The notes beneath the pieces were generated by a model. The model saw only the letters and a program-made list of their open reading frames with translations, made no database searches and was not told the origin of the DNA. The translations under genes were made by a program, and so were the position numbers. This document shows, piece after piece, positions 2,510-59,854 of a stretch of DNA of 64,000 bases. Positions within the stretch are counted from its first letter, which is position 1. Every line of letters starts with the position of its first letter. The stretch is from Chrysemys picta bellii (Eukaryota): the NCBI RefSeq assembly GCF_011386835.1, contig NC_088797.1:41726001-41790000 (forward strand), read 5' to 3'.

Positions 2510-5315
2510 CATAGAGTCAGAGTTTAAGATCAGAAGGGACCAATATGATCGTCTAATCTGACCTCCTGCACAATGCAAGCCGCAAGCAAGTGACCCATGC
2601 CCCACGCTGCAGAGGAAGGCGAAAAACCTCCAGGCCTCTGCCCTGGAGGAAAATTCCTTCCCGCCCCCAAATATGGTGATCAGTTAAACCCTGAGCATGT
2701 GGGCAAGACTCACCAGTCAGACACCCAGGAAAGAATTCTCTGTAGTAACTCAGATCCCACCCCATCGAACATCCTATCACAGACCATTGGGCATATTTAC
2801 CGCTAATAGTCAAAAATCAATTAATTGCCAAAATTAGGCTATCCCATCATACCATCCCCCCCATAAACTTATCAAGCTTAGTCTTGAAGCCAGATTTGTC
2901 TTTCGCTCCCACTGCTCCCCTTGGAAGGCTATTCCAGAACTTCACTCCTCTGATGGTTAGATTTCAAGTCTAAACTTCTTGATGGCCAGTTTATATCCAT
3001 TTGTTCTTGTGTCCACATTGGTACTAAGCTTAAATAATTCCTCTCCCTCCCTGGCATTTATCCCTCTGATATATTTATAGAGAGCAATCATATCTCCCCT
3101 CAGCCTTCTTTTGGTTAGGCTAAACAAGCCGAGCTCTTTGAGTCTCCTTTCATAAGACAGGTTTTCCATTCCTCGAATCATCCTAGTAGCTCTTTTCTGT
3201 ACCTGTTTCAGTTTGAATTCATCCTTCTTAAACATGGGAGACCAGAACTGCACACAGTATTCCAGATGAGGTCTCACCAGTGCCTTGTATAATGGTACTA
3301 ACACCTCCTTATCTCTACTGGAAATACCTCGCCTAATGCATCCCAGGACCGCATTAGCTTTTTTCACGGCCATATCACATTGGCAGCTCATAGTCATCCT
3401 GCAATCGAGGTCCTTCTCATCCTCTGTTACTTCTAACTGATAAGTCCCTAGTTTATAACAAAAAATTTTTGTTATTAATCCCTAAATGCATGACCTTGCA
3501 CTTTTCACTATTAAATTTCATCCTATTACTATTACTCCAGTTTACAAGGTCATCCAGATCTTCCTGTATGATATCTTGGTCCTTCTCTGTATTGGCAATA
3601 CTTCCCAGCTTTGTGTCATCTGCAAACTTTATTAGCACATTCCCACTTTTTGTGCCAAGGTCAGTAATAAAAAGATTATATGAGATTGGTCCCAAAACCG
3701 ATCCCTGAGGAACTCCACTAGTAACCTCGCTCCAGCCTGACAGTTCACCTTTCAGTATGACCCATTATAGTCTCCCCTTTAACCAGTTCCTTATCCACCT
3801 TTCAATTTTCATATTGATCCCCATCTTTTCCAATTTAACTAATAATTCCCCATGTGGAACCATATCAAATGCCTTACTGAAATCAAGGTAAATTAGATTC
3901 ATTGTGTTTCCTTTATCTAAAAAATCTGTTACCTTCTCAAAGAAGGAGATCAGGTTGGTTTGGCACGATCAACCTTTTGTAAAACCATGTTGTATTTTTT
4001 CCCATTTACCATTGACCTCAATGTCCTTAACTACTTTCTCCTTCAAATTTTTTTCCAAGACCTTGCATGCTACAGATATCAAACTGACAGGCCTTTTTTT
4101 CCCTTTCTTAAAAATAGGAACTATGTTAGCAATTCTCGAGTCATACGGTAAAGCCCCTGAGTTTACAGATTCATTAAAAAATTCTTGCTAATGGGCTTGC
4201 AATTTCATGTGCCAGTTCCTTTAATATTCTTGGATGAAGATTATCTGGGCCCCCCGATTTAGTCCTAATAAGCTGTTCGAATTTGGCTTCTACCTCAGAT
4301 GTGGTAATATCTACCTCCATATCTTCATTCCCATTTGTCATCCTGCCATTATCCCTAAGCTCCTCATTAGCTTCATTAAAGACTGAGGCAAAGTATTTGT
4401 TTAGCTATTGGGCCATGCCTAGATTATCCTTAACCTCCACTCCATCCTCAGTGTTTAGCAGTCCCACTTCTTCTTTCTTTGTTTTCTTCTTATTTATATG
4501 GCTATAGAACCTTTTACTATTGGTTTTAATTCCCTTTGCAAGGTCCAACTCTACATGGCTTTTGGCCTTTCTCACTTTATCCCTACATGTTCTGACCTCA
4601 ATAAGGTAGCTTTCCTTGCTGATCACTCCCATCTTCCACTCCGTGTAGGCTTTCTGCTTTTTCTTAATCACCTCTCTGAGATGCTTGCTCATCCAGGTTA
4701 GTCTACAACTCCTGCCTATGAATTTTTTTCCCCTTTCTTGGGATGCAGGCTTCTGATAGGTTCTGCAACTTTGACTTGAAGTAATTCCAGGCCTCCTCTG
4801 CCTTTAGATCCACAAGTTCTTCAGTCCAATCCACTTCCCTAACTAATTTCCTTAATTTTTTAAAGTTAGCCCTTTTGAAATCAAAAACCCTAGTCACAGA
4901 TCTATTTTTGTTTATCTTTCCATTTAGTTTGAACTGAATTAGTTCATGATCGCTCGAACCACGGTTGTCCCCTACAACCATTTCTTCTATGAGGTCTTCA
5001 CTACTTACCAAAACCAAATCTAAAATGGCATCCCCTCTTGTTGGTTCAGCAACTACTTGGTGAAGGAGTCCATCAGCTATCGCATCCAGGAAAATCTGAG
5101 CCCTATTATTATTACTAGCACTTGTCCTCTAGTCTATATCTGGGAAGTTAAAGTCTCCCATGATCACACAATTCCCATTAGTATTTACTTCATTAAAAAC
5201 ATTAAAGAGCTCTCTATCCATATCCAAGTCAAATCCTGGTGGTCTATAGCACACCCCAACCACTATCCCAGGGGAGGCTCTAGTAGCTTTCTTCCCCAAT
5301 GTGATTTTAAGCATT
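2510..5315 (-). mobile_element. CR1 LINE, 5'-truncated within the APE endonuclease, ORF2 broken by frameshifts/stops
   Basis: Minus-strand ORFs give the endonuclease motifs VGVCYRPP..IMGDFNFPDI (5129-5314) and SDHELIQF (4703-5017), the RT motif LIKFADDTKL (3453-3695) and the C-terminal RPHLEYCVQFWSP...RRLRGDMI (2957-3397). The CR1-type 3' UTR ends near 2510. Confidence 0.95.
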
Positions 5316-8300: not shown

Positions 8301-11145
8301 AGCTACGTTTGATCTGAACCAGAACTAAAAAGCATGGGATTACAGTAACAATCCCCTATCCTCTAAGTGTGACTCTAACCATTTTTCCAATTTAAAGTTA
8401 GCCTGCACTATGTATTTACTGATGTGGATAGTTTTCATATAAGTAGTTTTATTAAGATTAAAGCTTCCAAGAGAATTGTATGGCTCAGGAAACAGGTAAT
8501 AGGACATAGAGCTTTTCACCTCCTGTCTGCTGGATGAAATCCATCCCAGGTAAGTAAGGACAAACGTTGCTACCATCTGATTGTTCAACAGACTAATTAA
8601 TGGTCTCAGCCTAGTTCTCAGGGTAAAAGGCATCCACATATTGACATTAATTCTTGCATCATTGGCAGTCCCAAAAGAGAAGATGAGTGTTGCATGGGCC
8701 ATGGTAACTGAATTCCCCCAACTCCCTCATCAATGGAAATGGTCCCTCCAGCTGAGCACTGATGGCAAGCATTAGTAGGGGAACATGAGGAGGTTTGTAC
8801 TGTAGATGTCCATGCTGAAACTCTTTTGTGGTTAAAGAGAGGGCTTCGGAACTATTCAGCCAGTGCTTTACACAAGCAGCAAACTAAATCACCAACACAT
8901 GAACTTATTTTAAAAGATTAAAACCCATATTTTGTCATATGGTTTTATTAACAGTGTCTTACAAATGTACGGTCAGTAAATGTGAATGTCCTTAGCTTGC
9001 AAAACTTCAATTAAAATAAACAGGCTTCTATATAGTGCATAACTATATTCGCAAATGAGAATCAAGTTGTATTTATTTTCAAGCAATGTACAAGGGACCA
9101 ATACAAAATAAAGCCAATAAAGCAAAAGTGGCAATCTAATACAGCATTAGTAGTAGTCTAGTAGCTGGTCAAATGTAACTTGATTATCACACCATAGTTT
9201 AATAGCACTTAGTCCTTTCTGTGTAATTTTTAATACATGGAAACTGAGACTATTTACTTTTCCCTGAGGTACAATGTGAAAATCATTTAAAAATTAACAA
9301 AATGACCTGTTCCTACAAATACTGTAGAGCTGAAAGAGCTAAAATCTGTAGCGATTTATAGCCTGTCCAATCCCATTGACATATAGAATTAATATCCCAG
9401 CAGGCTTAAAAGAACTAGGGTAAGACTGGAAATTTCATGGATTTCATGCCTGTCTTGCTGACAGAAGTTGGGTATTTTTCTACTGGGAAGGGCATCTTCT
9501 CAAAGAGAGTAATGAAAACAAACACTTTCATTTCTCCCAAGAGAATGAGAATTTACAATATCGTTTAGTCTTCAGAGCATCCCTGATTCTGATGAGTTTA
9601 GGAAGACAGAGTGAGTTTTTTATAATAAATACTATGACTAAATTAAACAGAAGTTGTAGGGAGTTTGGGCTGGAATTTCGAACCTGTAACAAAGAAATGT
9701 CCGTAGGCACAGATGGAAAAGAGACACTGGCCAAGTGGATGAAGACTTGAGATATCCTCTACACTTGAGGATTTATATGGGCAAAATCTATTACATGAGC
9801 ACATGGTCGTGTGTTGTCTGTCTTAAATATTAGCAATTTCCTTATTAGGGATTTCTCAGTGGTAACAGCTCCCACCTCATGGACTTGAATTCAAATATAT
9901 AGACCAATGTACTTAAACATCTTTGAGGATCTGGGCATTAGGGTTCAAAATAGTAGAAAGAATCATTTCCCCTCTATCATTTTGAACCCTAATGGCCAGG
10001 TCCCCAAAGGTATTTAGATGCCTAACTCCTATTGAAAATCAGTGGAAGTTGGGCACCTAGGTACCTTTGAGGATTTGGACCTTAGCGCTACCAGTCCATG
10101 TTCTGCCTCAGACTATCATCGGCAGTCCCTTTGCGGTAGTTGGGTCCTGACAGGTACATTAGCAGTTACACAAACAAGCATTATGAAGTGTTTGATGCAT
10201 GAATGCCAGAGAGTTGCTGTAGAAACAGCTGGATAACTTAAGAACAGGACACAGTCGCAAGACAGGGTATTTGGGGGGCTATCAATATGTGCTTCACCTT
10301 TTGAACAATGACAGTGAAAGGGCTTTGAGGACCTCAGAACAATGTCTGGGGTGGGGTGTATTTATTTGCTTTACCTACTCTCCCCAGGCAGGAAGAGATT
10401 GCCATCCTCATCCTGATGCTGACCACAAGGTGCATGAGATCCTGAGTGGGAGATAAGACTCATTCTCCACCAGGTTAGGTGGAAAAAGGTGAAAAAGCTC
10501 CAGGTTCAGTTGAGCTACTGATTTGTCTCCAATAGGGATGATCCTAAACACTCCTCAACCCTCAGCTTTGTGAAAACTTCAGTTGACTTCAAACAAAGCA
10601 GAAGGGCATAAAATTGTATGCCAAGTCCCTGCTTAGGCAGAATCTCTGGTGCTGAACTGCTGTCAGCATGCAGCGATAACCATGTTGAAAGTCCACCGAT
10701 ACCAGACAGTTAGCTAGGCTGTCTGAACAGATACCAGTTAGAATTTTGCAATGGTGACAAATATTTTTAACACTTTACGTTTAAGATGGGTTTCTTCCTT
10801 GTGACTTTTGGGGTACAGTGAAGTAAATAAAGTAATTACCTGTGATTTTACTCTGCTGAGCAGGGATTAACAGTTAGCTGGATGCTTTGCAAGTATTTAA
10901 GTGAAACTTGGACTTGGAACAGCACTCCTGGGGAGTATAAGAAGTCTAGAAGCTACTAAAGACCCTGGAACACTGCTCAGTAAAGCAACTGATGAACCTC
11001 CTCTGATCTAAGCATAAAGAATCTCTTCGCTCTTACATGGTTGTAAATCAGAAGTTATTCCAATGAAATGTATGGAGTTCTGATAGTATAAACTTAGCAT
11101 GAAAGGTGAATCAGGGCTCTTGTCTGAATTCTTCATAAATTAGGG

Positions 11146-11198
11146 TGTGACGGTCCACGCTCCTGGGGTCAGGGCAGCGTGGACTATCAGTCACAGTC
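11146..11198 (-). repeat. 53-bp inverted copy of the LTR right (U5) terminus
   Basis: The reverse complement GACTGTGACTGATAGTCCACGCTGCCCTGACCCCAGGAGCGTGGACCGTCACA matches 13379-13431 with 2 mismatches and ends in the terminal CA. Confidence 0.95.
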
Positions 11199-12547
11199 AA
11201 CCCACCCGGGACGAACCAACCTTATGAGCCATCATATCGCAACGACGCCCGGCCAGAAGGTGAGGGACAACCATCAACCGCTGCCCCAGAAGATGTGGGC
11301 CACGATATGACAGGAATTGGATACGATGCTGGAGATGGGCGTGGTCGAGGAGTCAAAGAGTGAATGGCACAGTCCAATCGTTCTGGTCCCAAAACCCAAC
11401 AGGACCCCCCCCCCCCCCGATTCTGTATCAATTTCCGGAAGATGAACACTATCTCGCGGTTCGACGCGTACCCAATGCCATGGGTGGAAGAACTCCTAGA
11501 ACGACTCGGGGAAGCGAAGTATTTGTCAACACTAGATTTAACCAAAGGGTACTGGCAAATCCCCCTTACACCAAATTCCCGGGAAAAAACTGCCTTCCCA
11601 ACACCATTCGGCCTCTTCCACTTTGTAACCATGCCGTTCGGGTTACATGGGGCCGCAGCGACTTTTCAGCAGCTGATGAATAAGCTCTTGCTATCTCATG
11701 ACCGATACGCAGCGGCATATATAGACGACATTGTGGTCTACAGTAACAACTGGAAGGACCACCTCAGACACCTCATGGGGGTCCTCCAGGCCCTCAGAGC
11801 AGCCGGACTCACGGCCAACCCGGCGAAATGCCATCTCGGACAGGAAAAGGTGACCTACCTCGTGTACGTCATAGGGGAAGGGAAATTGCGCCCCAAATCA
11901 ATAAGGTGCAAGCCCTTATGAATACACCCACACCCAAAACAAAGAAGCAAGTGCGCCAGTTTTTGGGACTGGCCGGGTACTATCATCGCTTTGTACCAGA
12001 CTTCGCATCCCTGTCAGACCTGACGAAGAATTCTCAGCCGCGACAGGTACTGTGGTCCGATCCGTGTGGCAAGGCCTTCAGGATTCTGAAAGAACGGCTC
12101 ACGCAGGAACCGGTCCTGCGGCACCCCGATTTTACAAAGGAATTCATACTCCAAACGGACGCTTCAGAGGTAGGCTTAGGGGCAGTGCTCTCCCAAGAAT
12201 GGGAGGGGGAGGAACACCCGGCACTGTATCTGAGTCACAAATTATTTCCTCGAGAGCAACACTACTCAATGATAGAGAAAGAGGCCCTGGCCGTGAAATG
12301 GGCTATGGACGCCCTGCGCTATTATTTACTGGGGTACACCTTCAAATTGATCACTGACCATGCCCCCCTCAGATGGATAAACAGCATGAAAGACGCAAAC
12401 CCCCGAATCACGCGCTGGTACCTGTCACTCCAACCATACGACTTCCGCGTGTTTCATCATCTGGGTAAGGCTCATGCTAACGCGGATTTCTTTTCTAGAC
12501 AGGGAGAGTATGATGGGGAGACGTACCGCCCCGGGGGTCCTTTTTAA
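11199..12547 (+). pseudogene. Retrotransposon reverse transcriptase + RNase H (frameshifted)
   Basis: Begins THPGRTNLMSHHI...ELDTMLEMGVVEESKSEWHSPIVLVPKP, then RFCINFRKMN, LDLTKGYWQIP, MPFGLHGA and AYIDDIVVY. RNase H motifs are FILQTDASEVGLGAVL, EKEALAVKWA and LITDHAPLRW. Confidence 0.95.
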
Positions 12548-12558
12548 GGGGGTGTGTG
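12546..12558 (+). other. Polypurine tract preceding the LTR
   Basis: AAGGGGG(TGTGTG) lies immediately after the pol stop and directly before the TGTGAC LTR start. Confidence 0.7.
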
Positions 12559-13431
12559 TGTGACGGGGCCGTCTTACCACGCACTAGCCCTGACAGGGTT
12601 AAGTCCCAGGTGTTGACAGCGGAAGTCCTGCCTCCCTGGCAAGACTGGGCATGCTCCAAGTGCTCTAGTAGTATAAAGGGTGGGAGACCGTCTCATTCTG
12701 GGCTGGAGACTGCAGGGGAAGGACTTGCCTGGGAAGCTCCTGCAGGGGGCCAGCCACAGCCTCTGACTACGCCGGGAATCGCAGCCGTCCACAGCCCGCC
12801 TGCACCCCAGCGACTGGAGATGACTGGACCTGCCGAACACAGGGGAATCGACGTCTCATGGGAAACCCCATCACAGACTCTGGTAGGAAGTGACCCAGGG
12901 AGGGTGTCGGAGTGGTACCTCCCACCCAGGGAAACTCAGCGTGTTTTGGCAGGACCCCCCGCTTAGTCAGTGGCAAGCAGCTACGCCACTGTTAGGGCCC
13001 TGGGTCGGGGCCTGGTGGAGTTGGGTGGGCCCGGCCCCCCTACCGGGGCAGCCACACCCCAATGCTATAGACTCTGGCCACTAGGCCACGCTACCCTGCC
13101 CCAAAGAATCACTTTATGGACTCCGGCCATTAGGCCCCACTGCCCTGTAGCAAAGGGTGGCGCTATAGACTCTGGCCACTAGGCCACGCTGCCTGGCACC
13201 CAAGGGTGGTGCTATAGACTCTGGCTGCTAGGCCACGCCGCCCTGCACTGAAGGGGGTGCTATAGACTGCAGCCACTAGGCCATGCTGCCCTGCGCTGAA
13301 GGGCTGCTTTATGGACTGTGACTGATAGTCCACGCTGCCCTGACCCCAGGAGCATGGACCATCACAGGCTGCTTTACAGACTGTGACTGATAGTCCATGC
13401 TGCCCTGACCCCAGGAGCGTGGACCTTCACA
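12559..13431 (+). repeat. LTR of the Gmr1-like element (873 bp)
   Basis: Termini TGTGACGG...CCTTCACA, with the PPT on the left and the PBS on the right. TATAAA occurs at 12672-12677 and tandem ~49-bp units fill the 3' part. Confidence 0.9.
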
Positions 13432-13433
13432 CG

Positions 13434-13451
13434 TGGTGGAGAATGTGGGCA
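13434..13451 (+). promoter_or_regulatory. Primer binding site complementary to tRNA-Ala(AGC) 3' end
   Basis: TGGTGGAGAATGTGGGCA starts 2 nt after the LTR end. It is the reverse complement of ...TGCCCACATTCTCCA+CCA, recalled as a vertebrate tRNA-Ala(AGC) 3' end. Confidence 0.85.
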
Positions 13452-13519
13452 ATGCCCGGGACCTGCTGAAAGGTCCAGTGCAAGGAATCTAGACGGCGGG
13501 AGCCCCACCGCCATCTAAG

Positions 13520-14600
13520 ATGGATACAGAGAAGCTTCTAAAGTGGTTGCTGGAGAATCAGTAAGAGCAGGCGGCCCAACAGCGACAGCAGCAGGCTCAC
13601 ATGATGCAGCAGATGGCCAGCCAGCAGCAGTTGCAGATGACCCAGCACCAGGAACAACAGCAGCAACTCCTTTGAGAGCTGGCTGCCTAGCAACAATTGC
13701 AACAGGAATGCCTAATCCAACAAGTGGCAACTTTACTGCACACGCTGGGAGCTCCAGCCCCCACACCTACAGGAGCGGGATCTGGAGAGGCTCCAGTGGG
13801 GCTGCCAGTTCGCCTCACTAAGATGGGACTAGGCGACGACCCCGAGGCATTCCTGGTCACGTTCGAATGGGTCACCACTGCTGCTCGGTGGGCCCCAGAA
13901 CACTGGGCCACCATGCTAGCCCCTTATTTGATGGGACAGGCAGAGACGGCTACCATAACCTTGATCCCTGAGAGGCTTTGGAGTAACCCCGGGTGAAAGC
14001 GGCCATTTTAGACCAGACCAGCATTAGCCCTGAGACGTACCGCCAGCGCCTACATAAAGAACAGTATCCTCCTGGGGCTCGACCTTGGGCCATGGCCCAA
14101 CGGGTACAGAACCATTGTTGGAGATGGTTGGAGCCAGAAGGCTTGACTGGACCTCAGGTGGCGGAGATGATGGTGCTCGAACAGTTCACCCAGATCCTCC
14201 CGGCAGGAGGGAAAGCATGAATGCAACATCACCGGCCGGCGACCTTGTCAGCAGCCGTGGGCCTGATGGAGGACTACTTGGCGGCCGAAGGAGCCGAGGC
14301 AACCCCACGGAGGTCCAAAAACCTGAGCAGGAATCTCCACCCAACACCAGCCCCAAACCCACTAAGCCTCCCAGCCCCGAACCCAGGCACAGAGTTCCGC
14401 GGACTCCGATTCGAAGGGAACGGCCCCCACAAGGGGGGCGGAGTCCGCCAAGGGAAGGCCTTGGACCCTCGGAAGGCCGGAATCGCTGCTGGGAGTGCGG
14501 ACAAGAGGGACATTTCCAACGGGAATGCCCCTTCATGGATTGCAACTATGGGCAAGTGTGGGTTGCCGGACACAGAGCCCAGAAAAGGGGGCCAGGCAAA
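13520..14600 (+). pseudogene. gag with Gln-rich N-terminus, SCAN domain and CCHC zinc knuckle (stops/frameshifts)
   Basis: MDTEKLLKWLLENQ* is followed by a Q-rich stretch, then KMGLGDDPEAFLVTFE. A SCAN-like ETYRQRL...CWRWLEPE...MVLEQFTQILP...AVGLMEDYL spans about 14030-14285, and CWECGQEGHFQREC is at 14487-14528. Confidence 0.88.
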
Positions 14601-14852
14601 TTAGTGATCCCTGTGCGGGTCGAGGGGACCCCCACGAATGCTCTTGTGGACTCAGGATGCAGTCAGACCCTCTTACGGGAGGGGCTGGTCCCAGATCTTA
14701 GACTTTCCGGGAAAAAGATACACCTACAATGTGTCGATGGGGACATCCGCCCTTACCCCATAGCCTGGGTGAGGATCGGGATTGGCCAGCGGGAGGAAGT
14801 CCTCCACGTGGGCGTAGCCCCCAGATTGGCTGACCCCATAGTGCTGGGATGA
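14601..14852 (+). pseudogene. Retropepsin-type aspartic protease
   Basis: ALVDSGCSQT active-site motif, ending in the IVLG(*D) motif. Confidence 0.9.
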
Positions 14853-15229
14853 GACTGGCCAGAATTTAGGGAGATCCTCCAGCAGTATCAACCACCCGCT
14901 GCACAAATGGAAGGGGCTACGTCTGCAGGAAGGGGACTCCTCGGACACACACCGGAAGCAGATCCCGGGGAAGGGACGTCTACGGTGGGGAAGGCACCTG
15001 CTAACGCCCGACATCCCTCCGTGGAAGACGCGCAGACAGAGCTGGAGCGGGATATTGACTTTGTGAGGGAGCAGAGAGAAGACCCGACTCTGAGTAGGGC
15101 CTGGGAGCAGGCCACCATCCCCAGCCCTGGAGAGGACACCTCTCCGAGACCTCCGCAGGGGCCTCGGTTTGAGATCCAGTGGGACCGCCTATATCGGGTG
15201 GCTCGGGAACCACAGACACCGGAGCCACT

Positions 15230-16310
15230 TCATCAGTTGTTGGTTCCCCGGAGGTTGCAATGAGGCCTCCTACAGGTATCGCATGCAAACCCACGGGCAG
15301 GACACCTGGGGCAGGAAAAGACCCTTCAGAGGGTGGCCCGCCGATTTTTTTGGTCCGGCATTCACCAAGAGGTCCGGGAGTATCGCGCGTCTCGCCTGGA
15401 GTGCCAGCGGGCCGGACCAAAGGGTATACCCTGAGCCTCATTAATACTCCTACCCATGGTTGGTGTACCCTTTGAAAGCATCGGAATGGACTTGGTTGGA
15501 CCCTTAGACAGAAGCAAGACAGGGAACCGATTTATTTTAGTGATCGTGGACTACAGGACACTTTACCCCGAGGCTGTTCCCCTCCGTGCAGCTACGGCGC
15601 CAGGGATTGCCGCCGAACTCGTGAAGGTCTTCGCTAGGGTGGGGATACCCGCGGAGATCCTGACTGACCAGGGGACTAACCTATCCTCAAAACTGATAGC
15701 TGAGCTGTGCCGCCTCCTGAACATACGGACACTGCAAACGTCGGTTTACCGTCCACAAACAGACTGTCTAGTGGAGTGTTTTAATGGTACCCTGAAGTCC
15801 ATGTTGCAGAAGTTCGTGCAGGAAGACCCCAGCCATTGGGATACACTATTGCCAGCCCTACTGTTTGCCATAAGGGAGGTACCCCAAGCATCGACCGGGT
15901 TCTCACCCTTCGAACTTTTGTATGGCAGGCAGCCCTGAGGAATCCTGGACCTCCTGAGGGAAGACTGGGAGGCACAGGAGTCGCGAGTACTTGGGACCAC
16001 TCAGTATGTGCTACGCCTCCGAGAACGGCTCCAAGCCTTGGAAGCTTTCACCCGGGAGAATCTGCTGTGGGCCCAAGAGACACAGGAATGGGTATATAAT
16101 AGAGGGGCTAAGGTAAGGAGTTTTGACCCGGGGGACCAGGTGTTGCTCTTGTTGCCCTCGGCCGACTCAAAGCTCCTGGCCAAGTGGCAGGGGCCTTACG
16201 AGGTGATCCCACGGGTCGGGCCCGTAGATTATGAAGTCCAGTTACCCGGACGACGGAGGGACACTCTGACTTACCACGTGAATCTTTTGAAGGCATGGAA
16301 GGCCAGGGAG
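15230..16310 (+). pseudogene. Integrase (HHCC, rve core, GPY/F-type C-terminus), disrupted
   Basis: PFESIGMDLVGPL, ILVIVDY, ILTDQGTNL, YRPQTDCLVECFNGTLKSML, KLLAKWQGPYEV and YHVNLLKAW. Confidence 0.93.
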
Positions 16311-19300
16311 GCCTTATTCATCATTCCATCGCCCCTGGACCCAGAACTGGGACCACTAGCTGGGGAACCCCTAGACTCAAGGCAGGCTACACTTGGGACC
16401 AACCTCACCACAGCACAGCGGGAACAAATATCGCAACTCATAAAGGAATTAAACAGAGAAGATAGGATTGGGGACCCCAAACTCTTCAAGTGAAGTTCAT
16501 ATTAAACAATGACTTTCTCCGATGAAAGCACCTGACTGGACTATTATAGAAGGAAAAACAGCAAAAATTCTGCCATGAGAAGAAGGAACATTTCTTGGGA
16601 ACTTGAGAAACAATATCTTATGTGGCATGAACATGAGCTTGAACTTAGTTCAAAACACATCTAAAAACGAAAGGATTCTCTCTGTTTCTGTAAGAGTACC
16701 AGCTGAAATGCAAAGGGATATCTTGGACCACCCTCCCCATGGAAACAAATGAAGGCTTCATTGGAGAGTTGGACTAAGAGGTAGCTTTCCTGGATGATCC
16801 AGAAGTTCTCACCACCTCCACTATGAACAGAGAGGTACCCAGAGGGAACCTATGGAGACAATGCAGTCTTGATTTTGTAGACATGAAATATCCTGATGCA
16901 TTTTATTAAACCTTGAAAGATCTTGTTGAAAATAAAGCCACGTCTCCAGATTACCAGGAATGTTTGCCTGATATACAGTATCAGATGCCAGAAAGGCCAT
17001 ATTAGAATGAGAATACAGGGGAGGCTCTTAACTTTCTCACTCATCTGCAGTATTAGCTTGTATTTATTAAGGATATTCTGAAAATATTGCTGTCAAACTG
17101 CAAGGACTCAATTATCTAAGTTAACTGGCAAGTTTAAAGTCCTTCCACTGTTGTACAGGTCAGGGGTAGTTCTAAGAAAAATGTGTCTACTGTGTGGACT
17201 TTCTGACTCTTTTGCTGGGTTATAATCTGTACATTGCATCAGTCCGTTTTGTACTGCATACAGTACATCTGTATGACATATGTACACACACATGTCTTTA
17301 GCTTTGTGAGTGAAAAAGGAATTTGGAATTTGATACTGAATTGTTACACAACCAAAATTTATCCATCAAAGTATTTTTCCAGTTTTGTAGGGTGATTCTG
17401 CTTTTATGAGGTGTTTGTTTCTTTATGTTTCTTGATAGATTAATCAGCATTTTAGAACAGCTGTCTTAAACATACTTATCTGATGAAGTTAAGAAAGGCT
17501 TTTTTTAAACAGTTGAGTCACCAAGAAGGGACTTTCCAAGTTGTGCATTAGTGGAGTATGATTAAGACACAAACATTGATTTTTTGGACTCTGCATCCTT
17601 TTTGGTCTGTACTAACATACATAAATAGACCTAATAATTGAGCATACCCTGATCACTCTGGAGAAATGAGTCCTTCTGCTTTGCCAGAACAAGGAGTAAT
17701 AAAGTTTTTAAAACTAATAAAATATTGAAAGGCAATTAACATATTGTGCTAAATTCTATCCTCTAATACAGATGAGTTGAAGAATACTCCAGGGATGAAA
17801 ACCTTGATCCAATTAGTTCAGTGAGAAAACTCCCATTGACTTCACTGGGCCACAATTTAACGTCAGAACTCTAGTAGCATAGTATCTAAAATATTCCAGA
17901 AAGAACTCTGTCCAAAATAAAATCTAAAAATATTATCGGGATTGATGCATATAAAAATGACAGCTTACAGTACACTGGTCTGCAAACTCATGGAATCATA
18001 AATTAGAAGTGGAAAAGACACATCACCGCTGAGTTCAGAACGATTCACAGTTTACAGATTCACTTACTAGTGTGTGGTCTAATATGAACTGAAATGTCCC
18101 ATGCAAAGAGGCCTTCAACTTTCATTCAGGGACTTCTCTGCTGTTTAAAATATATGACTATCCAGAAGCTTTGGGATCTCAAATATTCCCTGATACTTCT
18201 GACTCCATGAATCATGCTAAATTCCTCTCCATCCTTGATATTCACACCCACCAAATATTTTCAGAAAACTGTAACCACTTTGCATCTTCATCACCATTAG
18301 GCACTCTATCTAGCACATCTCTAGCTCTCTTTAATTTTTCCGTTCAACCCTAAAATTTATATAATTCTTTTCTGAACTCCCTCCAGTTTGCCGATAACTA
18401 GCTTGCAATGTGATGCCCAGAAAGGAATGCAAAAAACCAGGGTTGAAATCCTGACTCCACTAAAGTCAATGACAGTTGTCCTCCATTCTATGAAACCTCT
18501 GCATATCCATCTCAAAACTGCATTGGCTCTTTTTTTCTGCCATATACATGAAGCACTCTATATGCAATAAACGGCATAAAAGTATATTGTATATGTAATT
18601 AATAAAGCTACTCACCACGGTGGTCAACTACTGCTTTCTCGAACATACCTTTTTTTTTAAACCCAAAACTATAATGCTTAGAATACTGAAAATGGCCAGA
18701 AGCAGTTTTTGTCAGCTTCTTGCATTAGTCAAAACAGGTCACTTTCACCCTTGCATGTCTCTTTTTTTTTTTTCTGAAAAGTCTGACTGCAAACTATCAA
18801 TAAGCACTTTTCCAGCTGGGACTTTTCCAATCACAACATAAAATACTCAGAGCAGTGACGCTTACTCTGCTGCACTGAACATGATGTTAGATAAAATTAG
18901 AATAGAAGTAGGCAGCGAATGCCTTCAGTGGATGACTACTTCGATAGCATAGACACACCAAATATTACAGAAATATATTACCCAAGGATCAATGGTATCT
19001 ATACATCATCTGCCTAACATCCTCTGATGTACCTGTAGTGCAAAATCTAGATTACAATGTGACTAACAAGCATAGTCCCTACAAAACTAAATAGTGTGGC
19101 TTTGGCATTTATTTATGCTGTTAACATCTTCTAGGTCCAGGATGTTCAGGTTGATATGTTTTCAATAACTAATGAATTTTAAGTAACCCCCCTTCCTCCA
19201 TCTCAATCGCCACACACATTTCCACACAGTCTTCTTTGGTAAATAATCACTTGACATTTGACAGAACCAAGCAGAAGGCAAACCCAAGCAAGAAAGCCCA

Positions 19301-19868: not shown

Positions 19869-20009
19869 TTAGGTTGAATGGATATAGTTGTATTGTTGGC
19901 GGATCAGTTGCCAGCTCAGGCCAAGGCTGTAAGTGTCAGCTGAACACTGACAAATTCATAGCTGGAAGCCAGACCAGTTCACCTATATATTAGTATTGTT
20001 CAAGATAGG

Positions 20010-22215
20010 TAGAGTGACCATATTTCCTATGCTGAATATAGGACACCTGGTAAAATTACTCACATTCAAGCGAGTTCAACGGTAATCAATCAGAACTATG
20101 CAGTACAAACATTCAAATTAACATCAAGTTGACTGAGCCCATTAAAAAGAAATACTGCCTAGTTGGATTCTTTTTATTTACCTTATCTTTAAGGCTTTAG
20201 GGTTCACATGGGGAGAGGTGACATACACACCCCCATGGGGAGAGACACACCCACACTCCCATACTCCTCTCTCACACAGGGGGTGGGGATGACCAACCAA
20301 CCCAATCATCCCTGCCCGGTGCTCTCTGCCCTCCAGGCCTGGCTGGGCCCCCGGGATGGACCCGTCTCTCCTTGTACCTGGTGCCGCGTGTTCTCGAGGC
20401 AACACGTGGGGGGACGCAGGTTCACATGCCCCCCATTTCAGATTTCTGCCAGGGCTCAGACCAGACCATGGCCAGTAGTAGCCTTTCGGCACTGTGTGGG
20501 AGGGAAGGGACGGGAGCTGCTTCCAGCCACAAGGGAGAGGGGGAGGGATGACCTGGCTCATGTCTTTGCAGAACTCATCTCTTCCCCCCTAACCCTCACT
20601 CCCCTGTGGCTGGAAGCAGCTTGTCCCTTCCTGCCCGCACAGTGTTGAAAGGCAGCTAACAGCTCCAGGCTGCTGCTGACCACTGACATAACCCAGCCAC
20701 CTCCTGTCCCCCGGCTACAGCACAGGCAGGAAGGGGTTAAGCCGGGGTGGGCAAACTTTTTGACCTGAAGGCCACATCTGGATATGGAAATTGTATGGCG
20801 GGCCATAAATGCTGATGAAATTGCGGGTTGGGGTGGTGGGGGGGTGAGGGCTCTGGCTGGTGGTGCGGGCTCTAGGGTGGGGCTGGGGATGAGGGGTTGG
20901 ATATGCAGGAGGGTGCTCCGGGCTGGGACCGAGCAGTTCAAAGGGCGGGAGAGGAATCAGGGCTGGGGGAGGGGGTTGGGGCGTGGAAGGGGGTCAGGAG
21001 TGTAGGATCCAAGCGGCGCTTACCTCAAGGAGCTCCCGGAAGCAGTGGCATGTCTCCCTTCCGGCTCCTACGCAGAGGCGTAGCCAGGAGCTGTGCGTAG
21101 GAGCCAGAGGGGGAACATGCCACTGCTTCCAGCACGCAGAGCCATGGCACGTGCGGAGCGGGGCAAGCCAGCAACCCCGCTCCCTGGCTGGAGCACTGGA
21201 GCAGCGCAAGCCCTGGACCCCACTCCCGGACAGGAGCTCGAGGGCCGGATTAAAACATATGAAGGGCCGGATGCTGCCCCCGGGCCATAGTTTGCCCACC
21301 CCTGGGGTAAGCCCTAAGGATGCATTGTGCACCAGGGCCCAGGGAACCTAACTGCAGGCGCTTCAGCAAACCCGGTCAGAGAGGTGGCTCAGCAAGGTGC
21401 CTGGGGGATGGAGCAGCCCCGCACTCTCGGAGGGCAGGACCCAGGGCGGGACAGGAGGGGAAAGAGGGTGCTAAGCCCCTGCCCAGGGGACTGCTGTGGA
21501 GCCTGCAGGGTCAGGGCATGAACAGACTGGAAATTGCTCCCCTTCTGCCACTCCAGAGTTTAGCTGAGGAGTGGAGAGGCTTCCCCATGCCAGCGCTGTG
21601 CGGGGCTCCAGCACACACAGGGCTCAGCTCCTCCTCCTGGGCCGGAGGGTCTTGGGCTTTCCCAGGGTGCCGGCCAAGCCAGAGGCAGTGGGGGAAGGAA
21701 GGAGCCTGCTGGCCAAGTTGTTGGTCAGCTGAGCACTCCTACCAGGGGCTGGTTCTCTGCACAGCGCGGGGTGCAAGATGCGCCCCGCCAGGTGGGATAT
21801 GGAGGAGCAGTGGGGCTAGCACCTGCCTACACTCACCAGCCACTGGAGCTCACAGCCAGAGCTGGCCGGAAACAAGATGGAGGATGGGGCCCTGCTGGCC
21901 AAGAGCCAGTATGCAGCAGGGGCTTTGCTGACGGACCAGCAGGGGGAGCGGCCAGCCCCGCGTGCTGCTTTTTTGCCCCACCAGTAGCCTTGCACTCCCA
22001 CCTCCATCATCAGCCACTGGATCCCCCCACTCACCACTGATGGGCAGGCAGCTGGTGAGCAGGGATCCGGCCAGCAGCAGGACCCGCCAGTACTGGTGGT
22101 GGGGGAGACAGAAAATACAGGACAATTTGCCCATTTTTAAGAAAAAGTCAGGACACCTGCAGGAGGGCTTAAATATGGAACTGTCCCTTTAAAAACAGGA
22201 CGTCTGGTCACCCTA
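20010..22215. mobile_element. Non-autonomous hAT element (TAGGGTGACCA TIR, MER96-like)
   Basis: TIRs TAGAGTGACCA / TGGTCACCCTA and 8-bp TSD AAGATAGG (20002-20009) / AAGATTGG (22216-22223). Confidence 0.8.
20743..21304. mobile_element. hAT (Charlie-like) MITE nested in the previous element
   Basis: TIRs C(A)GGGGTGGGCAAAC / GTTTGCCCACCCCTG and TSD GGTTAAGC / GGGTAAGC (7/8). Confidence 0.85.
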
Positions 22216-24202
22216 AAGATTGGTGTTAGATTTGTAAGAATGTGTTCAGTCTCTATAACATGTTTGTAAGTTGCTGCATGCATTCATCTTATTTGTAATG
22301 TCTGTATTCAATGATACAAGGTAAAATATGTTTGCCTTAGTACTGTAAAAGTGTCTGCACTGAACTTGTGAACCTAGGCAGGAAACATGGTTTCCCTGGC
22401 TATCAAGAAGAACTATCAAAACTAAGTGGGCCATTGCCGGACAAGAACTTTGTTGATTGTGCCCTCCATCTATGAAGAAGTTATATGCAGGAGTACTTGT
22501 CCCATCGGTTTGAACTCTGTGGGGAAGGGCATCTAAAGATGCTCACAAGAAGAAATAGTTATCTCTTTGCTGTTTGAACTCTCTCAGGCCTAGAGACACT
22601 AAACTGAAGCAGAAAGCCTAAGGATTATCCCAGAGGTCCTGCCTGAAAGACATTTTGAACTGACGGTTTACGAGATCACCATTTGGAACCATAGACTGTA
22701 ACTCATTTGTTGTGCACATATGTTGTCTGCTTTAACATGTAAATAACTCTCACATTTCTTTTCTTAGTTAATAAATCCTTAGTTTACAATAAAATTGGCT
22801 ACCAGCATCATCTTTATAGTGAGGTTTGAGGTACAAATTAACCTGTGATAAGTGACTGGTCTCAGGAGACTAGAAGCAACCAGAATATTTTGTGACCATT
22901 TATCACTAGGTCCATCTTGCCGGGGTGGCAAGATAACTGGAGTGCCAAAGGGGACTATCTGTGACTCCATGGTAAGACTGGTATAGGGCTTCAGAAGTTC
23001 ATATTTGTTACTGGGTTGGTGAAGTCTAATTATAGAACATACCATCAATTGGGGATATCTGCCCTACTTTTGGCAATCTGCCCTGAGGCTGGCAGACAAG
23101 GTCGTGAGCCACTCCAGATAGTGTGATAATAGTAATCAATAGTTCTGTGTTAAACCACAGCAGGGGCAATGCTAGTGAGTGGCAGGAATGGTCACATGCC
23201 CCTCCCCAGATGCGGGGGAGGGGGGGAGGGGGCACATCCCAGAGGGGGCGGGAAGTTACAGCTGTGCTCAGGTAGGTGCCTCAGGTCAGGAGGAGAGTAC
23301 CTTGCCTGTGCTCTGAGGCTGCTTGCCCAGCCCTGGTGAGCTTCTTTCTTGCAGTAATGGGACAAAATGGCAGGGCTCAGGGGAGGGAGGAAGGGAGAGA
23401 GAGCAGGGAGGAAGGGGCGGCTACTGGGGACACTGGGGATGATCGTGGGGATCATAGGAGGGAGAACGGGGCAGCATAGGCCAGGGCTGGGAGTCTGGGG
23501 GCGAGGGGGGGTGGCTGCAGCAAGGAAACAGCCATGTGGCCTGGATGGATGGGCATCTGGGAGGGTGGGGGGGCAGCAGGGCCAGAGGCTAGCAATGGGT
23601 GTGTGTGTTTGGGAGAGAAATAAACCCATGGGGGATGGGAGGGCTCAGGGAAGAAGGAAGAGGGGGCCGCTGGGGACACTGGGGATTATCGTGGGGATCA
23701 TGGGAAGGGGGGCGGGGGGTCAGCATAGGCCAGGGCTGGGAATCTGGTGCGGGGTGGTGGCCGCAGCAAGGAAACAGCCATGTGGCCTAGATGGATGGGC
23801 GTTTAATTTTTTTTTAAAGATTGAAACAAAGAGAAGCACTGAGCACATCTCTGGCTTGTAGGAAAAGAGTGGGGTAGAGTCTGTGTGTGTAGTGGTAGCC
23901 CAGGGAAGAATGCTTGCTCACTCATTGCCCTCCCAGAATCCCAGGTCAGAATTAAAATACCCTAGATTTCCTCCCTCACATGATGAATCCTTTAGGATTA
24001 ATTATGGTAGGACCACAATTCCCAGGAATTTTCTGTTCATGCCATCGTGTGTGCAGACAAGTGAACTTCACTTTGCTAAGGCCCCTACTATTGGGGTTGA
24101 CAAGAGTAGCTCAAGGCCATGGGCCACCTGAGTTCTCTGGGCTGGGTGTAACTGCTTGAGCTCTCTGGTTGGATGCTCACGTGGACTTTCTAACATGCCC
24201 AG

Positions 24203-24566
24203 CAGGGCCGGTTTTAGCAGGTGCGGGACCCCACGCCGGGACGCGAATTGTCTCACCCCCCTGCCCCACCCCGACTCCGCCCCCTCCCTGCCCCATTGGA
24301 TCCTTCCCCAAATCCTCGCCCTGGCCCTGCGTCTTCCCCAAGCACGCCGCATTCCTCCTCCCCATCCCTCCCTTCCAGGCTTGCGCTGATCAGCTGTATG
24401 GCGGTGCAAGCGCTGGAGGGAGGGGGGAGAAACAGGACGCAGCTTTTCTTTTTTTTTTTTTTTCTTTTTTTTCCCGCGCCGCCGTCAGCCCTGGATGTTG
24501 CGGGGCCCTCTTAGGCGCGGGGCCCCATTCCGGGGAATCAGCCGAATCGGCTTAAAGCCGGCCCTG
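24203..24566. mobile_element. hAT (Tip100-like) MITE
   Basis: TIRs CAGGGCCGG / CCGGCCCTG and TSD ATGCCCAG / ATGCCCAC (7/8). Confidence 0.85.
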
Positions 24567-59250: not shown

Positions 59251-59854
59251 TAGAATCATAGTTCTGTAAGGGACCTTGAGAGGTCATCCAATGATGGAGA
59301 TTCTACAATCTTCCTAGGCAATTTTATTCCAGTGCTTAACCACCCTGACAGGAAGTTTTTCCTAATGTCCAACCTAAACCTCCTTTGCTGCAATTTAAGC
59401 CCATTGCTCCTTGTCCTATCCTCAGCGGTTAAGAAGAACAATTTTTCTCCCTCCTCCTTGTAACAACCTTTTATGTACTTGAAAACTGTTATCATGTCCC
59501 CTCTCAGTCTTCTCTTTTCCAGACTAAACAAACCCAATTTTTTCAATCTTCCCTCATAGGTCACGTTTTCTAGACCTTTAATCATTTCTATTGCTCTTCT
59601 CTGGACTTTCTCCAATTTGTCCACATATTTCCTGAAAAGTGGTACCCAGAACTGAACACAATACTCCAGTTGAGCCTAATCAGCGCAGAGTAGAACGGAA
59701 GAATTACTTTTTGTGTCTTGCTTAAAACACTCCTGCTAATACATCCCAGAATCATCTTCACTTTTTTTGCAGCAGTGTTACACTGTTGACTCATATTTAG
59801 TTTGTGATCTACTTTGACCCCCAGATCCCTTTCCACAATACTCCTTCCTAGGCA
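59251..59854 (-). mobile_element. CR1 LINE 3' fragment with internal deletion near the tail
   Basis: The minus ORFs read [44 protein letters not shown] and ERDLGVKVDHKLNMSQQC. The TAGAATCATAG terminus is at 59251. Confidence 0.92.

What the first reader, a model, noticed from the sequence alone, without database searches (positions are those of the whole stretch)
11146..16450. Circularly permuted Gmr1-type retrotransposon: footprint of an integrated one-LTR circle
Seen: the element reads RT-RH-PPT-LTR-PBS-gag-PR-IN with one complete LTR in the middle. It stops at LTTAQREQISQLI(KE) near 16445, and the left part starts at (S)THPGRTNL at 11199. Known: Gmr1-clade elements run gag-PR-IN-RT-RH, and their IN-RT linker has the form L..Q...L..LL.EF.DVFS..PGRT. 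The two ends therefore sit only about 4-8 codons apart in the intact pol. Inference: the whole genome is present once but opened at a single point inside pol. This is what a one-LTR circular DNA would leave if linearised and captured without normal LTR-end integration, and no TSD is visible. One-LTR circles are usually treated as dead ends, so a germline-fixed permuted copy would be unusual.
Basis: partly seen in the sequence, partly recalled or inferred. Interest (0 to 1): 0.88.

Follow-up and report, generated by a model that had tools for sequence, protein, structure and literature searches.

The report
Circularly permuted single-LTR turtle retrotransposon copy
A decayed Gmr1-like gypsy retrotransposon sits in the genome as one unit-length copy, opened inside its pol gene with its only LTR in the middle and a short inverted LTR-end hairpin at one edge, so it most likely entered by a non-standard route, but this is a single unverified locus.

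Summary
Window 11146-~16450 reads RT, RNase H, PPT, one 873-bp LTR, PBS, gag (SCAN, CCHC), PR, IN.

Against intact Gmr1-order polyproteins of turtles, the right end and the left start map 0-11 residues apart. In the closest one, P0162, they map to aa 873 and 877. Only about 12-27 nt of pol are missing and nothing is present twice.

Both halves show equal CpG decay. The flanks are ordinary AT-rich host DNA. The 5-bp target duplication made by an intact relative (L001) is absent.

The left edge is not pol joined to host. It is a 53-bp inverted copy of the LTR's U5 terminus (11146-11198). This copy starts exactly at the processed TG/CA end, forms a strong hairpin, and meets pol with 2-3 nt of microhomology.

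The "captured one-LTR circle" reading is therefore plausible but incomplete. A natural cDNA end was also involved.

I could not obtain the orthologous empty site, same-family copies or read support. The exact breakpoints, the state of the host site and the correctness of the assembly remain open.

Verdict: real, unusual, and a new variant of known non-canonical retroelement insertion. Interest is moderate.

The parts
11146..11198 (-). 53-bp inverted copy of the LTR 3' (U5) terminus. Its outer end is the LTR terminal TGTGA (the complement of ...TCACA), directly abutting host DNA. It forms a 50-nt hairpin plus a 3-nt tail.
   Evidence: It is 96% complementary to 13379-13431 and to 13314-13366. 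As ssDNA it folds at -17.7 kcal/mol, z = -5.9. The CG dinucleotide that separates the LTR from the PBS is absent at the host junction.
11197..12547 (+). 3' part of pol: RT and RNase H, from the Ser codon of the (S/T)xxPG(R/K)T linker motif to the pol stop TAA at 12545. It is broken by a stop at 11308 and by frameshifts near 11400-11417 (a C-run) and 11880-11960.
   Evidence: Pfam RVT_1 and RT_RNaseH. blastx to P0162 aa 877-1312 at 74-78% identity. Stops listed.
12546..12552 (+). Polypurine tract AAGGGGG upstream of the LTR.
   Evidence: Homologous to the PPT of the intact relative L001 (AAGGGGGAGGG).
12559..13431 (+). The only LTR (873 bp; TGTGAC...TTCACA). Its 3' part consists of 49-bp and 65-bp tandem repeats (13063-13431).
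   Evidence: Its start and end are homologous to the LTR ends of L001. Tandem repeats. No second LTR in the window.
13434..13451 (+). Primer-binding site TGGTGGAGAATGTGGGCA, 2 nt (CG) after the LTR.
   Evidence: 17 of 18 nt identical to the PBS of L001. Assignment to a tRNA-Ala is from memory only.
13520..14400 (+). gag with a SCAN-type capsid domain. It is broken by stops at 13562, 13673, 13688 and 14218, and by frameshifts.
   Evidence: Pfam SCAN, 3.7e-14. blastx to P0162. Stops.
14484..14849 (+). CCHC zinc knuckle and aspartic protease.
   Evidence: Pfam zf-CCHC and Asp_protease_2/RVP.
14850..16454 (+). Integrase (zinc region, rve core, SH3/p58 C-terminal domain), ending in the IN-RT linker. 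The true end lies between 16438 and 16454. In-frame stops at 14850, 15261, 15432 and 15936.
   Evidence: Pfam rve, SH3_Tf2-1 and Integrase_p58_C. A single blastx HSP 14412-16454 to P0162 aa 190-873. Homology of the 161-aa ORF to 150 relatives stops at query residue 148-149 at the latest. Linker alignment.

Best explanation
What it is. One reverse-transcribed genome of a Gmr1-like Ty3/gypsy element entered the chromosome as a unit-length, circularly permuted DNA. Its form was a one-LTR circle, or the equivalent circular reverse-transcription intermediate, opened in the IN-RT linker. It was joined to a chromosomal break by end joining rather than by the normal two-LTR-end integrase reaction.

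The two junctions. On the right, the broken pol end is joined to host DNA. On the left, a 53-bp fragment lies between host and pol in inverted orientation. This fragment carries the natural U5 end of linear cDNA and forms a self-complementary hairpin. It meets pol with 2-3 nt of microhomology.

Later history. About 12-27 nt of pol were lost at the opening. The copy has since decayed and is non-functional.

Shown: the permuted anatomy, the near-coincident breakpoints, the inverted U5 end, the lack of a TSD and the equal decay of both halves.

Inferred: the circular precursor, end joining, and the order of events.
For: - Anatomy RT-RH-PPT-LTR-PBS-gag-PR-IN with one LTR.
- Intact relatives have gag-PR-IN-RT-RH in one ORF, flanked by two LTRs and a 5-bp TSD (P0162/L001).
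- The two ends map 0-11 residues apart in 10 or more full-length relatives, and 3 residues apart in the closest.
- No part of the internal region is duplicated.
- CpG-to-TG/CA decay is the same in the RT-RH, gag and IN segments: 37%, 35% and 34% of the relative's CpGs.
- GC content and CpG o/e change sharply at both edges. The flanks are 0.37-0.40 GC with CpG o/e 0.15-0.17.
- The flanks are unrelated to the element.
- The flanking pentamers TAGGG versus AACAG or AAGGA do not match (4 sequence).
- The 53-mer differs from each terminal LTR unit by only 2 of 53 positions, three of the four being CpG transitions in the LTR units. It was therefore near-identical to this LTR at insertion.
- One-LTR circles are the dominant fate of germline LTR-retrotransposon cDNA in Drosophila oocytes (bioRxiv 10.1101/2022.09.25.509424).
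Against: - A pure circle has no U5 terminus. The exact TG/CA end at 11146 needs a second, linear cDNA fragment or a different precursor.
- In lentiviral vector work, one-LTR circles are poor substrates for integrase-independent integration compared with linear DNA (PMC4510976).
- No empty site, no same-family copy and no read evidence could be obtained. Contiguity of the flanks and the exact breakpoints are unproven.
Confidence: 0.5

Rival explanations
1. The precursor was an aberrant linear reverse-transcription product, not a closed circle. A strand started and ended at the same internal point, and the R/PBS strand transfers gave it one LTR in the middle. Its 3' end then switched template onto the 5' end of a minus-strand DNA, just beyond the U5 hairpin, and ran off. 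This created a normal U5 end. Integrase joined that U5 end to the host as a one-ended integration, and the other end (in pol) was joined by NHEJ.
For: - The outer end of the 53-mer is exactly the processed CA/TG terminus, without the CG that lies between the LTR and the PBS.
- The inner end lies 3 nt beyond a strong hairpin.
- It meets pol with 2-3 nt of microhomology at the Ser codon.
- 53 bp is ample for an integrase att site (general knowledge).
- One-ended integrase events repaired by host end joining are described for HIV (from memory).
Against: - It needs an unexplained internal start of synthesis.
- A PBS-like site in the linker of the relative (9 of 12 matches) is no better than 7 other such sites in that element.
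- The penultimate LTR repeat unit also ends in TCACA, so the apparent terminus could be internal.
- Nothing here tests integrase involvement.
Confidence: 0.2
2. The 53-bp inverted LTR end is the remnant of an older, normally integrated copy or solo LTR in the opposite orientation. A break inside it later captured the permuted DNA, with loss of the rest of the older insertion.
For: It explains the clean LTR-end/host junction without invoking integrase on an odd substrate. Nested insertions among LTR elements are common (PMC11899658 background).
Against: It requires deletion of the remaining ~820 bp of the older LTR, plus its other junction. The 53-mer looks like the ancestral state of this very LTR, so there is no sign that it is older. 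The permutation would still need the circle-type explanation.
Confidence: 0.12
3. A tandem array (LTR-internal-LTR-internal-LTR), made by unequal LTR recombination or by dimeric cDNA, was later trimmed by two independent deletions.
For: Tandem LTR-retrotransposon structures sharing a central LTR are common in plants and are reported in animals (PMC11899658).
Against: The two truncation points would have to fall within 27 nt or less of each other in a ~5.3-kb unit, which is about 1% by chance. No base of the internal region occurs twice. This does not explain the inverted 53-mer. The flanks carry no element remnants.
Confidence: 0.08
4. Assembly artefact: two different copies, or the two LTRs of one interrupted copy, were joined through a collapsed LTR.
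For: An LTR is a repeat at which assemblers can mis-join. No read data are available here.
Against: - There is no N or gap in the window.
- Both halves show the same decay.
- It would still need matching breakpoints in two copies.
- The copy is old, so its LTRs would be diverged enough to assemble.
Confidence: 0.07

Closest known systems
Gmr1-like Ty3/gypsy LTR retrotransposons of vertebrates (e.g. the intact Chrysemys picta copy L001 encoding P0162)
   Same: SCAN-type gag, CCHC, PR, IN, RT and RNase H with IN upstream of RT. TG...CA LTRs. Homologous PPT and PBS. 70-78% amino-acid and 71-74% nucleotide identity.
   Different: The intact copy has two LTRs, collinear gag-pol and a 5-bp TSD (AGGTG). 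The window copy has one LTR, is circularly permuted, has no TSD, carries an inverted U5 end and is riddled with stops and frameshifts.
One-LTR circles (eccDNA) of retroviruses and LTR retrotransposons
   Same: Unit length, with a single LTR flanked by PPT on one side and PBS on the other. This is exactly the internal topology seen here.
   Different: Circles are extrachromosomal, are regarded as dead ends, and integrate poorly without integrase (PMC4510976). Here the topology is chromosomal and is accompanied by a linear-cDNA U5 end.
Integrase-independent or one-ended (aberrant) retroviral integration repaired by host end joining
   Same: No TSD, junctions inside viral sequence, small deletions, microhomology and filler fragments.
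   Different: These events are known from cell culture with integrase mutants or inhibitors (partly from memory). This would be an old germline example in a retrotransposon.
Tandem LTR-retrotransposon arrays sharing a central LTR
   Same: The same local order: ...RT-RH-LTR-PBS-gag...
   Different: Arrays contain more than one unit and end in LTRs with a TSD. Here there is exactly one unit minus 12-27 nt, and no terminal LTRs.

Membership tests
Gmr1-like clade of Ty3/gypsy (Metaviridae) | pol domain order PR-IN-RT-RH (IN upstream of RT) | tested here: met
   In the closest relatives the order lies in one ORF (P0162: SCAN, Integrase_H2C2, rve, SH3, p58_C, RVT_1, RNaseH). The window's IN end and RT start map to adjacent residues of these ORFs. 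In the window itself the order is seen only across the permutation point.
Gmr1-like clade of Ty3/gypsy (Metaviridae) | gag with a SCAN-like capsid C-terminal domain and a CCHC knuckle | tested here: met
   Pfam SCAN 3.7e-14 and zf-CCHC 3e-05. SCAN derives from Gmr1-like gag (PMC3424704).
Gmr1-like clade of Ty3/gypsy (Metaviridae) | RT groups with Gmr1 in a phylogeny | not tested
   No tree was built. The nearest hits are turtle, fish (including Gadus morhua) and amphibian 'Gypsy retrotransposon integrase-like' polyproteins.
Canonical integrase-mediated LTR-element insertion | Two terminal LTRs and a short TSD (5 bp in this clade) | tested here: not met
   There is one internal LTR. The flanking pentamers differ. 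L001 shows the 5-bp TSD AGGTG.
Chromosomally captured one-LTR circle | Exactly one unit; single LTR between PPT and PBS; both ends at one internal point | tested here: met
   The gap is 4-9 codons and nothing is duplicated.
Chromosomally captured one-LTR circle | Both host junctions lie in internal (non-terminal) sequence | tested here: not met
   The right junction does. The left junction is the terminal TG of an inverted 53-bp U5 fragment.
Chromosomally captured one-LTR circle | Flanks contiguous in an uninserted (orthologous or allelic) site | not testable with these tools
   No turtle genome DNA search is available. The window's ORFs are not in the protein collection.
Tandem LTR-retrotransposon array | Two or more internal regions, with sequence present more than once | tested here: not met
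   Self-BLAST finds only the 53-bp inverted match and the intra-LTR tandem repeats.

The most novel reading that the evidence does not exclude
The locus is a fossil of a reverse-transcription intermediate rather than of a finished circle. The precursor was a permuted linear cDNA whose end was rebuilt by a hairpin-guided template switch onto the minus-strand 5' end. Integrase inserted its single U5 end, and host end joining attached the other end. This would be a natural germline record of one-ended integration in a vertebrate LTR retrotransposon.
Probability: 0.15. Interest if true: 0.7.

Novelty: new variant of a known kind. Interest (0 to 1): 0.5.

Why it matters
One-LTR circles and aberrant cDNAs are usually counted as dead ends of retroelement replication. 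A heritable, unit-length permuted copy would show that such by-products can occasionally enter a vertebrate germline through host DNA repair. The junction details (exact U5 end, hairpin, microhomology, small deletion, no TSD) would then record how. It is a single decayed locus with no effect on the host that I can see. Its value lies in mechanism and in prompting a genome-wide search for more such copies.

Tried and rejected
1. Same-family copies, to fix the breakpoints at DNA level. A HMMER search of 1.84 billion representatives and a word-indexed search with the IN-C ORF gave at best 66% identity. The best full-length relative (P0162/L001) is only 71-74% identical in DNA.

2. The orthologous empty site. 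An exact look-up of 10 window ORFs, including flank ORFs and the junction-spanning ORF, found none in the collection. The DNA collections offered hold no turtle genomes. No host exon was recognisable in the window: large ORFs outside the element have no Pfam hit.

3. Flank repeats, to rebuild the pre-insertion site. None were found.

4. Filler of element origin beyond 16454 or before 11146. None was found.

5. An ectopic tRNA priming site in the IN-RT linker. The relative has TGCTGGAGAAGT there (9 of 12 matches to the PBS), but 7 other sites in that element match equally well. Rejected.

6. Autointegration products, worked through by reasoning. The two small circles are not unit length. The inversion circle predicts IN joined to an inverted full LTR, which is not what is seen. 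Rejected.

7. A simple inversion of a normal minus-oriented provirus. It gives the order LTR-gag...RH-LTR, not the observed order. Rejected.

8. The shared 7-mer TCATAAA (11133-11139 and 16438-16444) as a TSD. It is not adjacent to the left junction and is not the 5-bp size of this clade. Left as a possible chance match.
Full report
**What is there**

The window has no N. Between 11146 and about 16450 lies a GC-rich block (0.53-0.62 GC, CpG o/e 0.36-0.77). It is set in AT-rich host DNA (0.37-0.40 GC, CpG o/e 0.15-0.17) with sharp edges.

Pfam assigns the following, left to right on the + strand:
- RVT_1
- RT_RNaseH
- then, after an 873-bp non-coding block, SCAN (gag)
- zf-CCHC
- aspartic protease
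- rve
- the SH3/p58 C-terminal integrase domains

The non-coding block is an LTR at 12559-13431 (TGTGAC...TTCACA):
- It is preceded by the polypurine tract AAGGGGG.
- It is followed by CG and an 18-nt PBS.
- All three signals are homologous to those of an intact relative.
- Its 3' part is made of 49-bp and 65-bp tandem repeats.
- There is no second LTR and no other copy in the 64 kb.

**Is it really a permutation of one unit?**

A HMMER search with the last integrase ORF (16008-16490) returned many polyproteins in which this domain lies in the middle and is followed by RT. No alignment went past query residue 148-149, which is about 16450.

blastx of the region against those proteins, and against turtle proteins found with P0002, shows that the right end and the left start of the element map to nearly the same residue of one protein:

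| Protein | Right end maps to | Left start maps to |
|---|---|---|
| P0162 (Chrysemys picta bellii; closest, 70-78% aa identity) | 873 | 877 |
| P0004 | 508 | 511 |
| P0034 | 632 | 637 |
| P0060 | 975 | 982 |
| P0002 | 767 | 767 |

The linker alignment reads:
- relatives: ...L(T/D)xxQxxxhxxLLxxFxxV(L/F) | (S/T)xxPG(R/K)T...
- window, right end: ...LTTAQREQISQLI(KEL)
- window, left start: (S)THPGRTNLMSHH

Whether KEL (16446-16454) is still element sequence is uncertain. It matches only 7 of 15 nt of L001, and the conserved F is an L. The right boundary therefore lies between 16438 and 16454, and 4-9 codons (12-27 nt) of pol are missing. Two independent truncations would coincide this closely about 1% of the time (inference).

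P0162 is encoded in locus L001 by a full-length element with gag-IN-RT-RH in one ORF. That element has two 99.4%-identical LTRs, the same PBS and PPT, and a 5-bp TSD (AGGTG).

The leftmost 53 bp (11146-11198) are not pol. They are an inverted copy of the 3' (U5) end of the LTR.
- They are 96% complementary to both terminal 65-bp repeat units.
- The outer end, which abuts host DNA, is exactly the LTR terminus (TGTGA...). It lacks the CG dinucleotide that separates the LTR from the PBS in both this element and L001. That is the position at which integrase-processed cDNA ends.
- As single-stranded DNA the 53-mer folds into a 50-nt hairpin with a 3-nt tail (-17.7 kcal/mol, z = -5.9, no shuffle as good).
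- The tail's TC is shared with the Ser codon at which pol resumes. This gives 2-3 nt of microhomology.
- Three of the four mismatches to the LTR units are CpG-to-TpG/CpA changes in the LTR. The 53-mer therefore looks like the ancestral state of this same LTR.

**Age and unity of the two halves**

The copy is dead:
- in-frame stops at 11308, 13562, 13673, 13688, 14218, 14850, 15261, 15432 and 15936
- frameshifts near 11400-11417, 11880-11960, 13890-13950 and 14334-14412

I used the young L001 copy as a yardstick. The share of its CpGs that read TG/CA in the window is 37% in RT-RH, 35% in gag and 34% in PR-IN. Retention is likewise equal at 40%, 35% and 36%. The halves do not differ in decay, which is what a single insertion predicts.

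**Host junctions**

The flanking pentamers (TAGGG on the left; AACAG or AAGGA on the right) do not match, so there is no clade-typical 5-bp TSD. A 7-mer, TCATAAA, occurs 6 nt before the left junction and again at 16438-16444. I cannot tell chance from a real duplication. The flanks are unique in the window and unrelated to the element.

**Mechanism**

The body of the insert has the topology of a one-LTR circle, or of the circular reverse-transcription intermediate, opened once in the IN-RT linker. This is the simplest source of a unit-length permuted copy.

Such circles are the main fate of germline retrotransposon cDNA in Drosophila oocytes (bioRxiv 10.1101/2022.09.25.509424). They are, however, poor substrates for integrase-independent integration in lentiviral vector studies (PMC4510976).

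A circle has no U5 end, so the inverted 53-mer needs an extra ingredient. There are three candidates:
- a co-captured fragment of linear cDNA acting as end-joining filler (my preferred reading)
- a template switch onto the 5' end of minus-strand DNA next to the hairpin, followed by one-ended integrase joining (rival 1)
- a remnant of an older inverted copy at the site (rival 2)

A twice-trimmed tandem array and mis-assembly are less likely, for the reasons given in the rival explanations. Tandem arrays that share a central LTR are well documented (PMC11899658), but they contain more than one unit.

**Limits**

- No same-family copy, orthologous empty site or read evidence could be reached.
That step is referred.

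**Verdict**

The structure is a new variant of known non-canonical retroelement insertion. It is of moderate interest, and it would rise if long reads and empty sites confirm it or if more such copies are found.

Noticed in passing
window 11140-11145: The six host bases directly abutting the inverted LTR terminus read TTAGGG, one vertebrate telomere repeat unit. A single unit may well be chance, but telomerase-type filler at repaired breaks is known.
   Followed up: no
window 11133-11139 and 16438-16444: The 7-mer TCATAAA occurs near both junctions. It could be chance, microhomology or a displaced duplication.
   Followed up: partly
window 13063-13431: The 3' third of the LTR is built of 49-bp units and two 65-bp units. 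Each 65-bp unit ends in a near-palindrome that mimics the LTR terminus (TGTGAC...GTCACA).
   Followed up: partly
window 11401-11417: A run of about 14 C inside RT coincides with one of the frameshifts.
   Followed up: no
window 2957-3397 (-) and 59256-59624 (-): Two ORFs (146 and 122 aa) share motifs with each other (...KVQ(K/R)RA...LGLFSL.KRRLRGDMI...). From memory they resemble the C-terminal part of CR1-type LINE ORF2. They have no Pfam hit.
   Followed up: partly
window 20000-24500: A GC-rich block (up to 0.60 GC) with long ORFs on both strands that have no Pfam hit and look non-coding. An internal duplication is visible in ORF 23367-23861. It could be a CpG island or another repeat.
   Followed up: partly
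P0001 (1170 aa, metaclust): This database protein matches the window's integrase C-terminus twice (aa 402-635 and 886-1118) with RT in between. This is an IN-RT-IN arrangement, which suggests a rearranged or tandem copy elsewhere.
   Followed up: no
L001 8004-8690 versus window 12547-12960: The intact Chrysemys relative has about 680 bp, including a C-terminal ORF extension, between RNase H and the PPT. The window element lacks this. Part of it shows weak similarity to the window's LTR.
   Followed up: no
window 9914-10016: An imperfect palindrome of about 100 bp (78% self-complementary) in the left flank.
   Followed up: no
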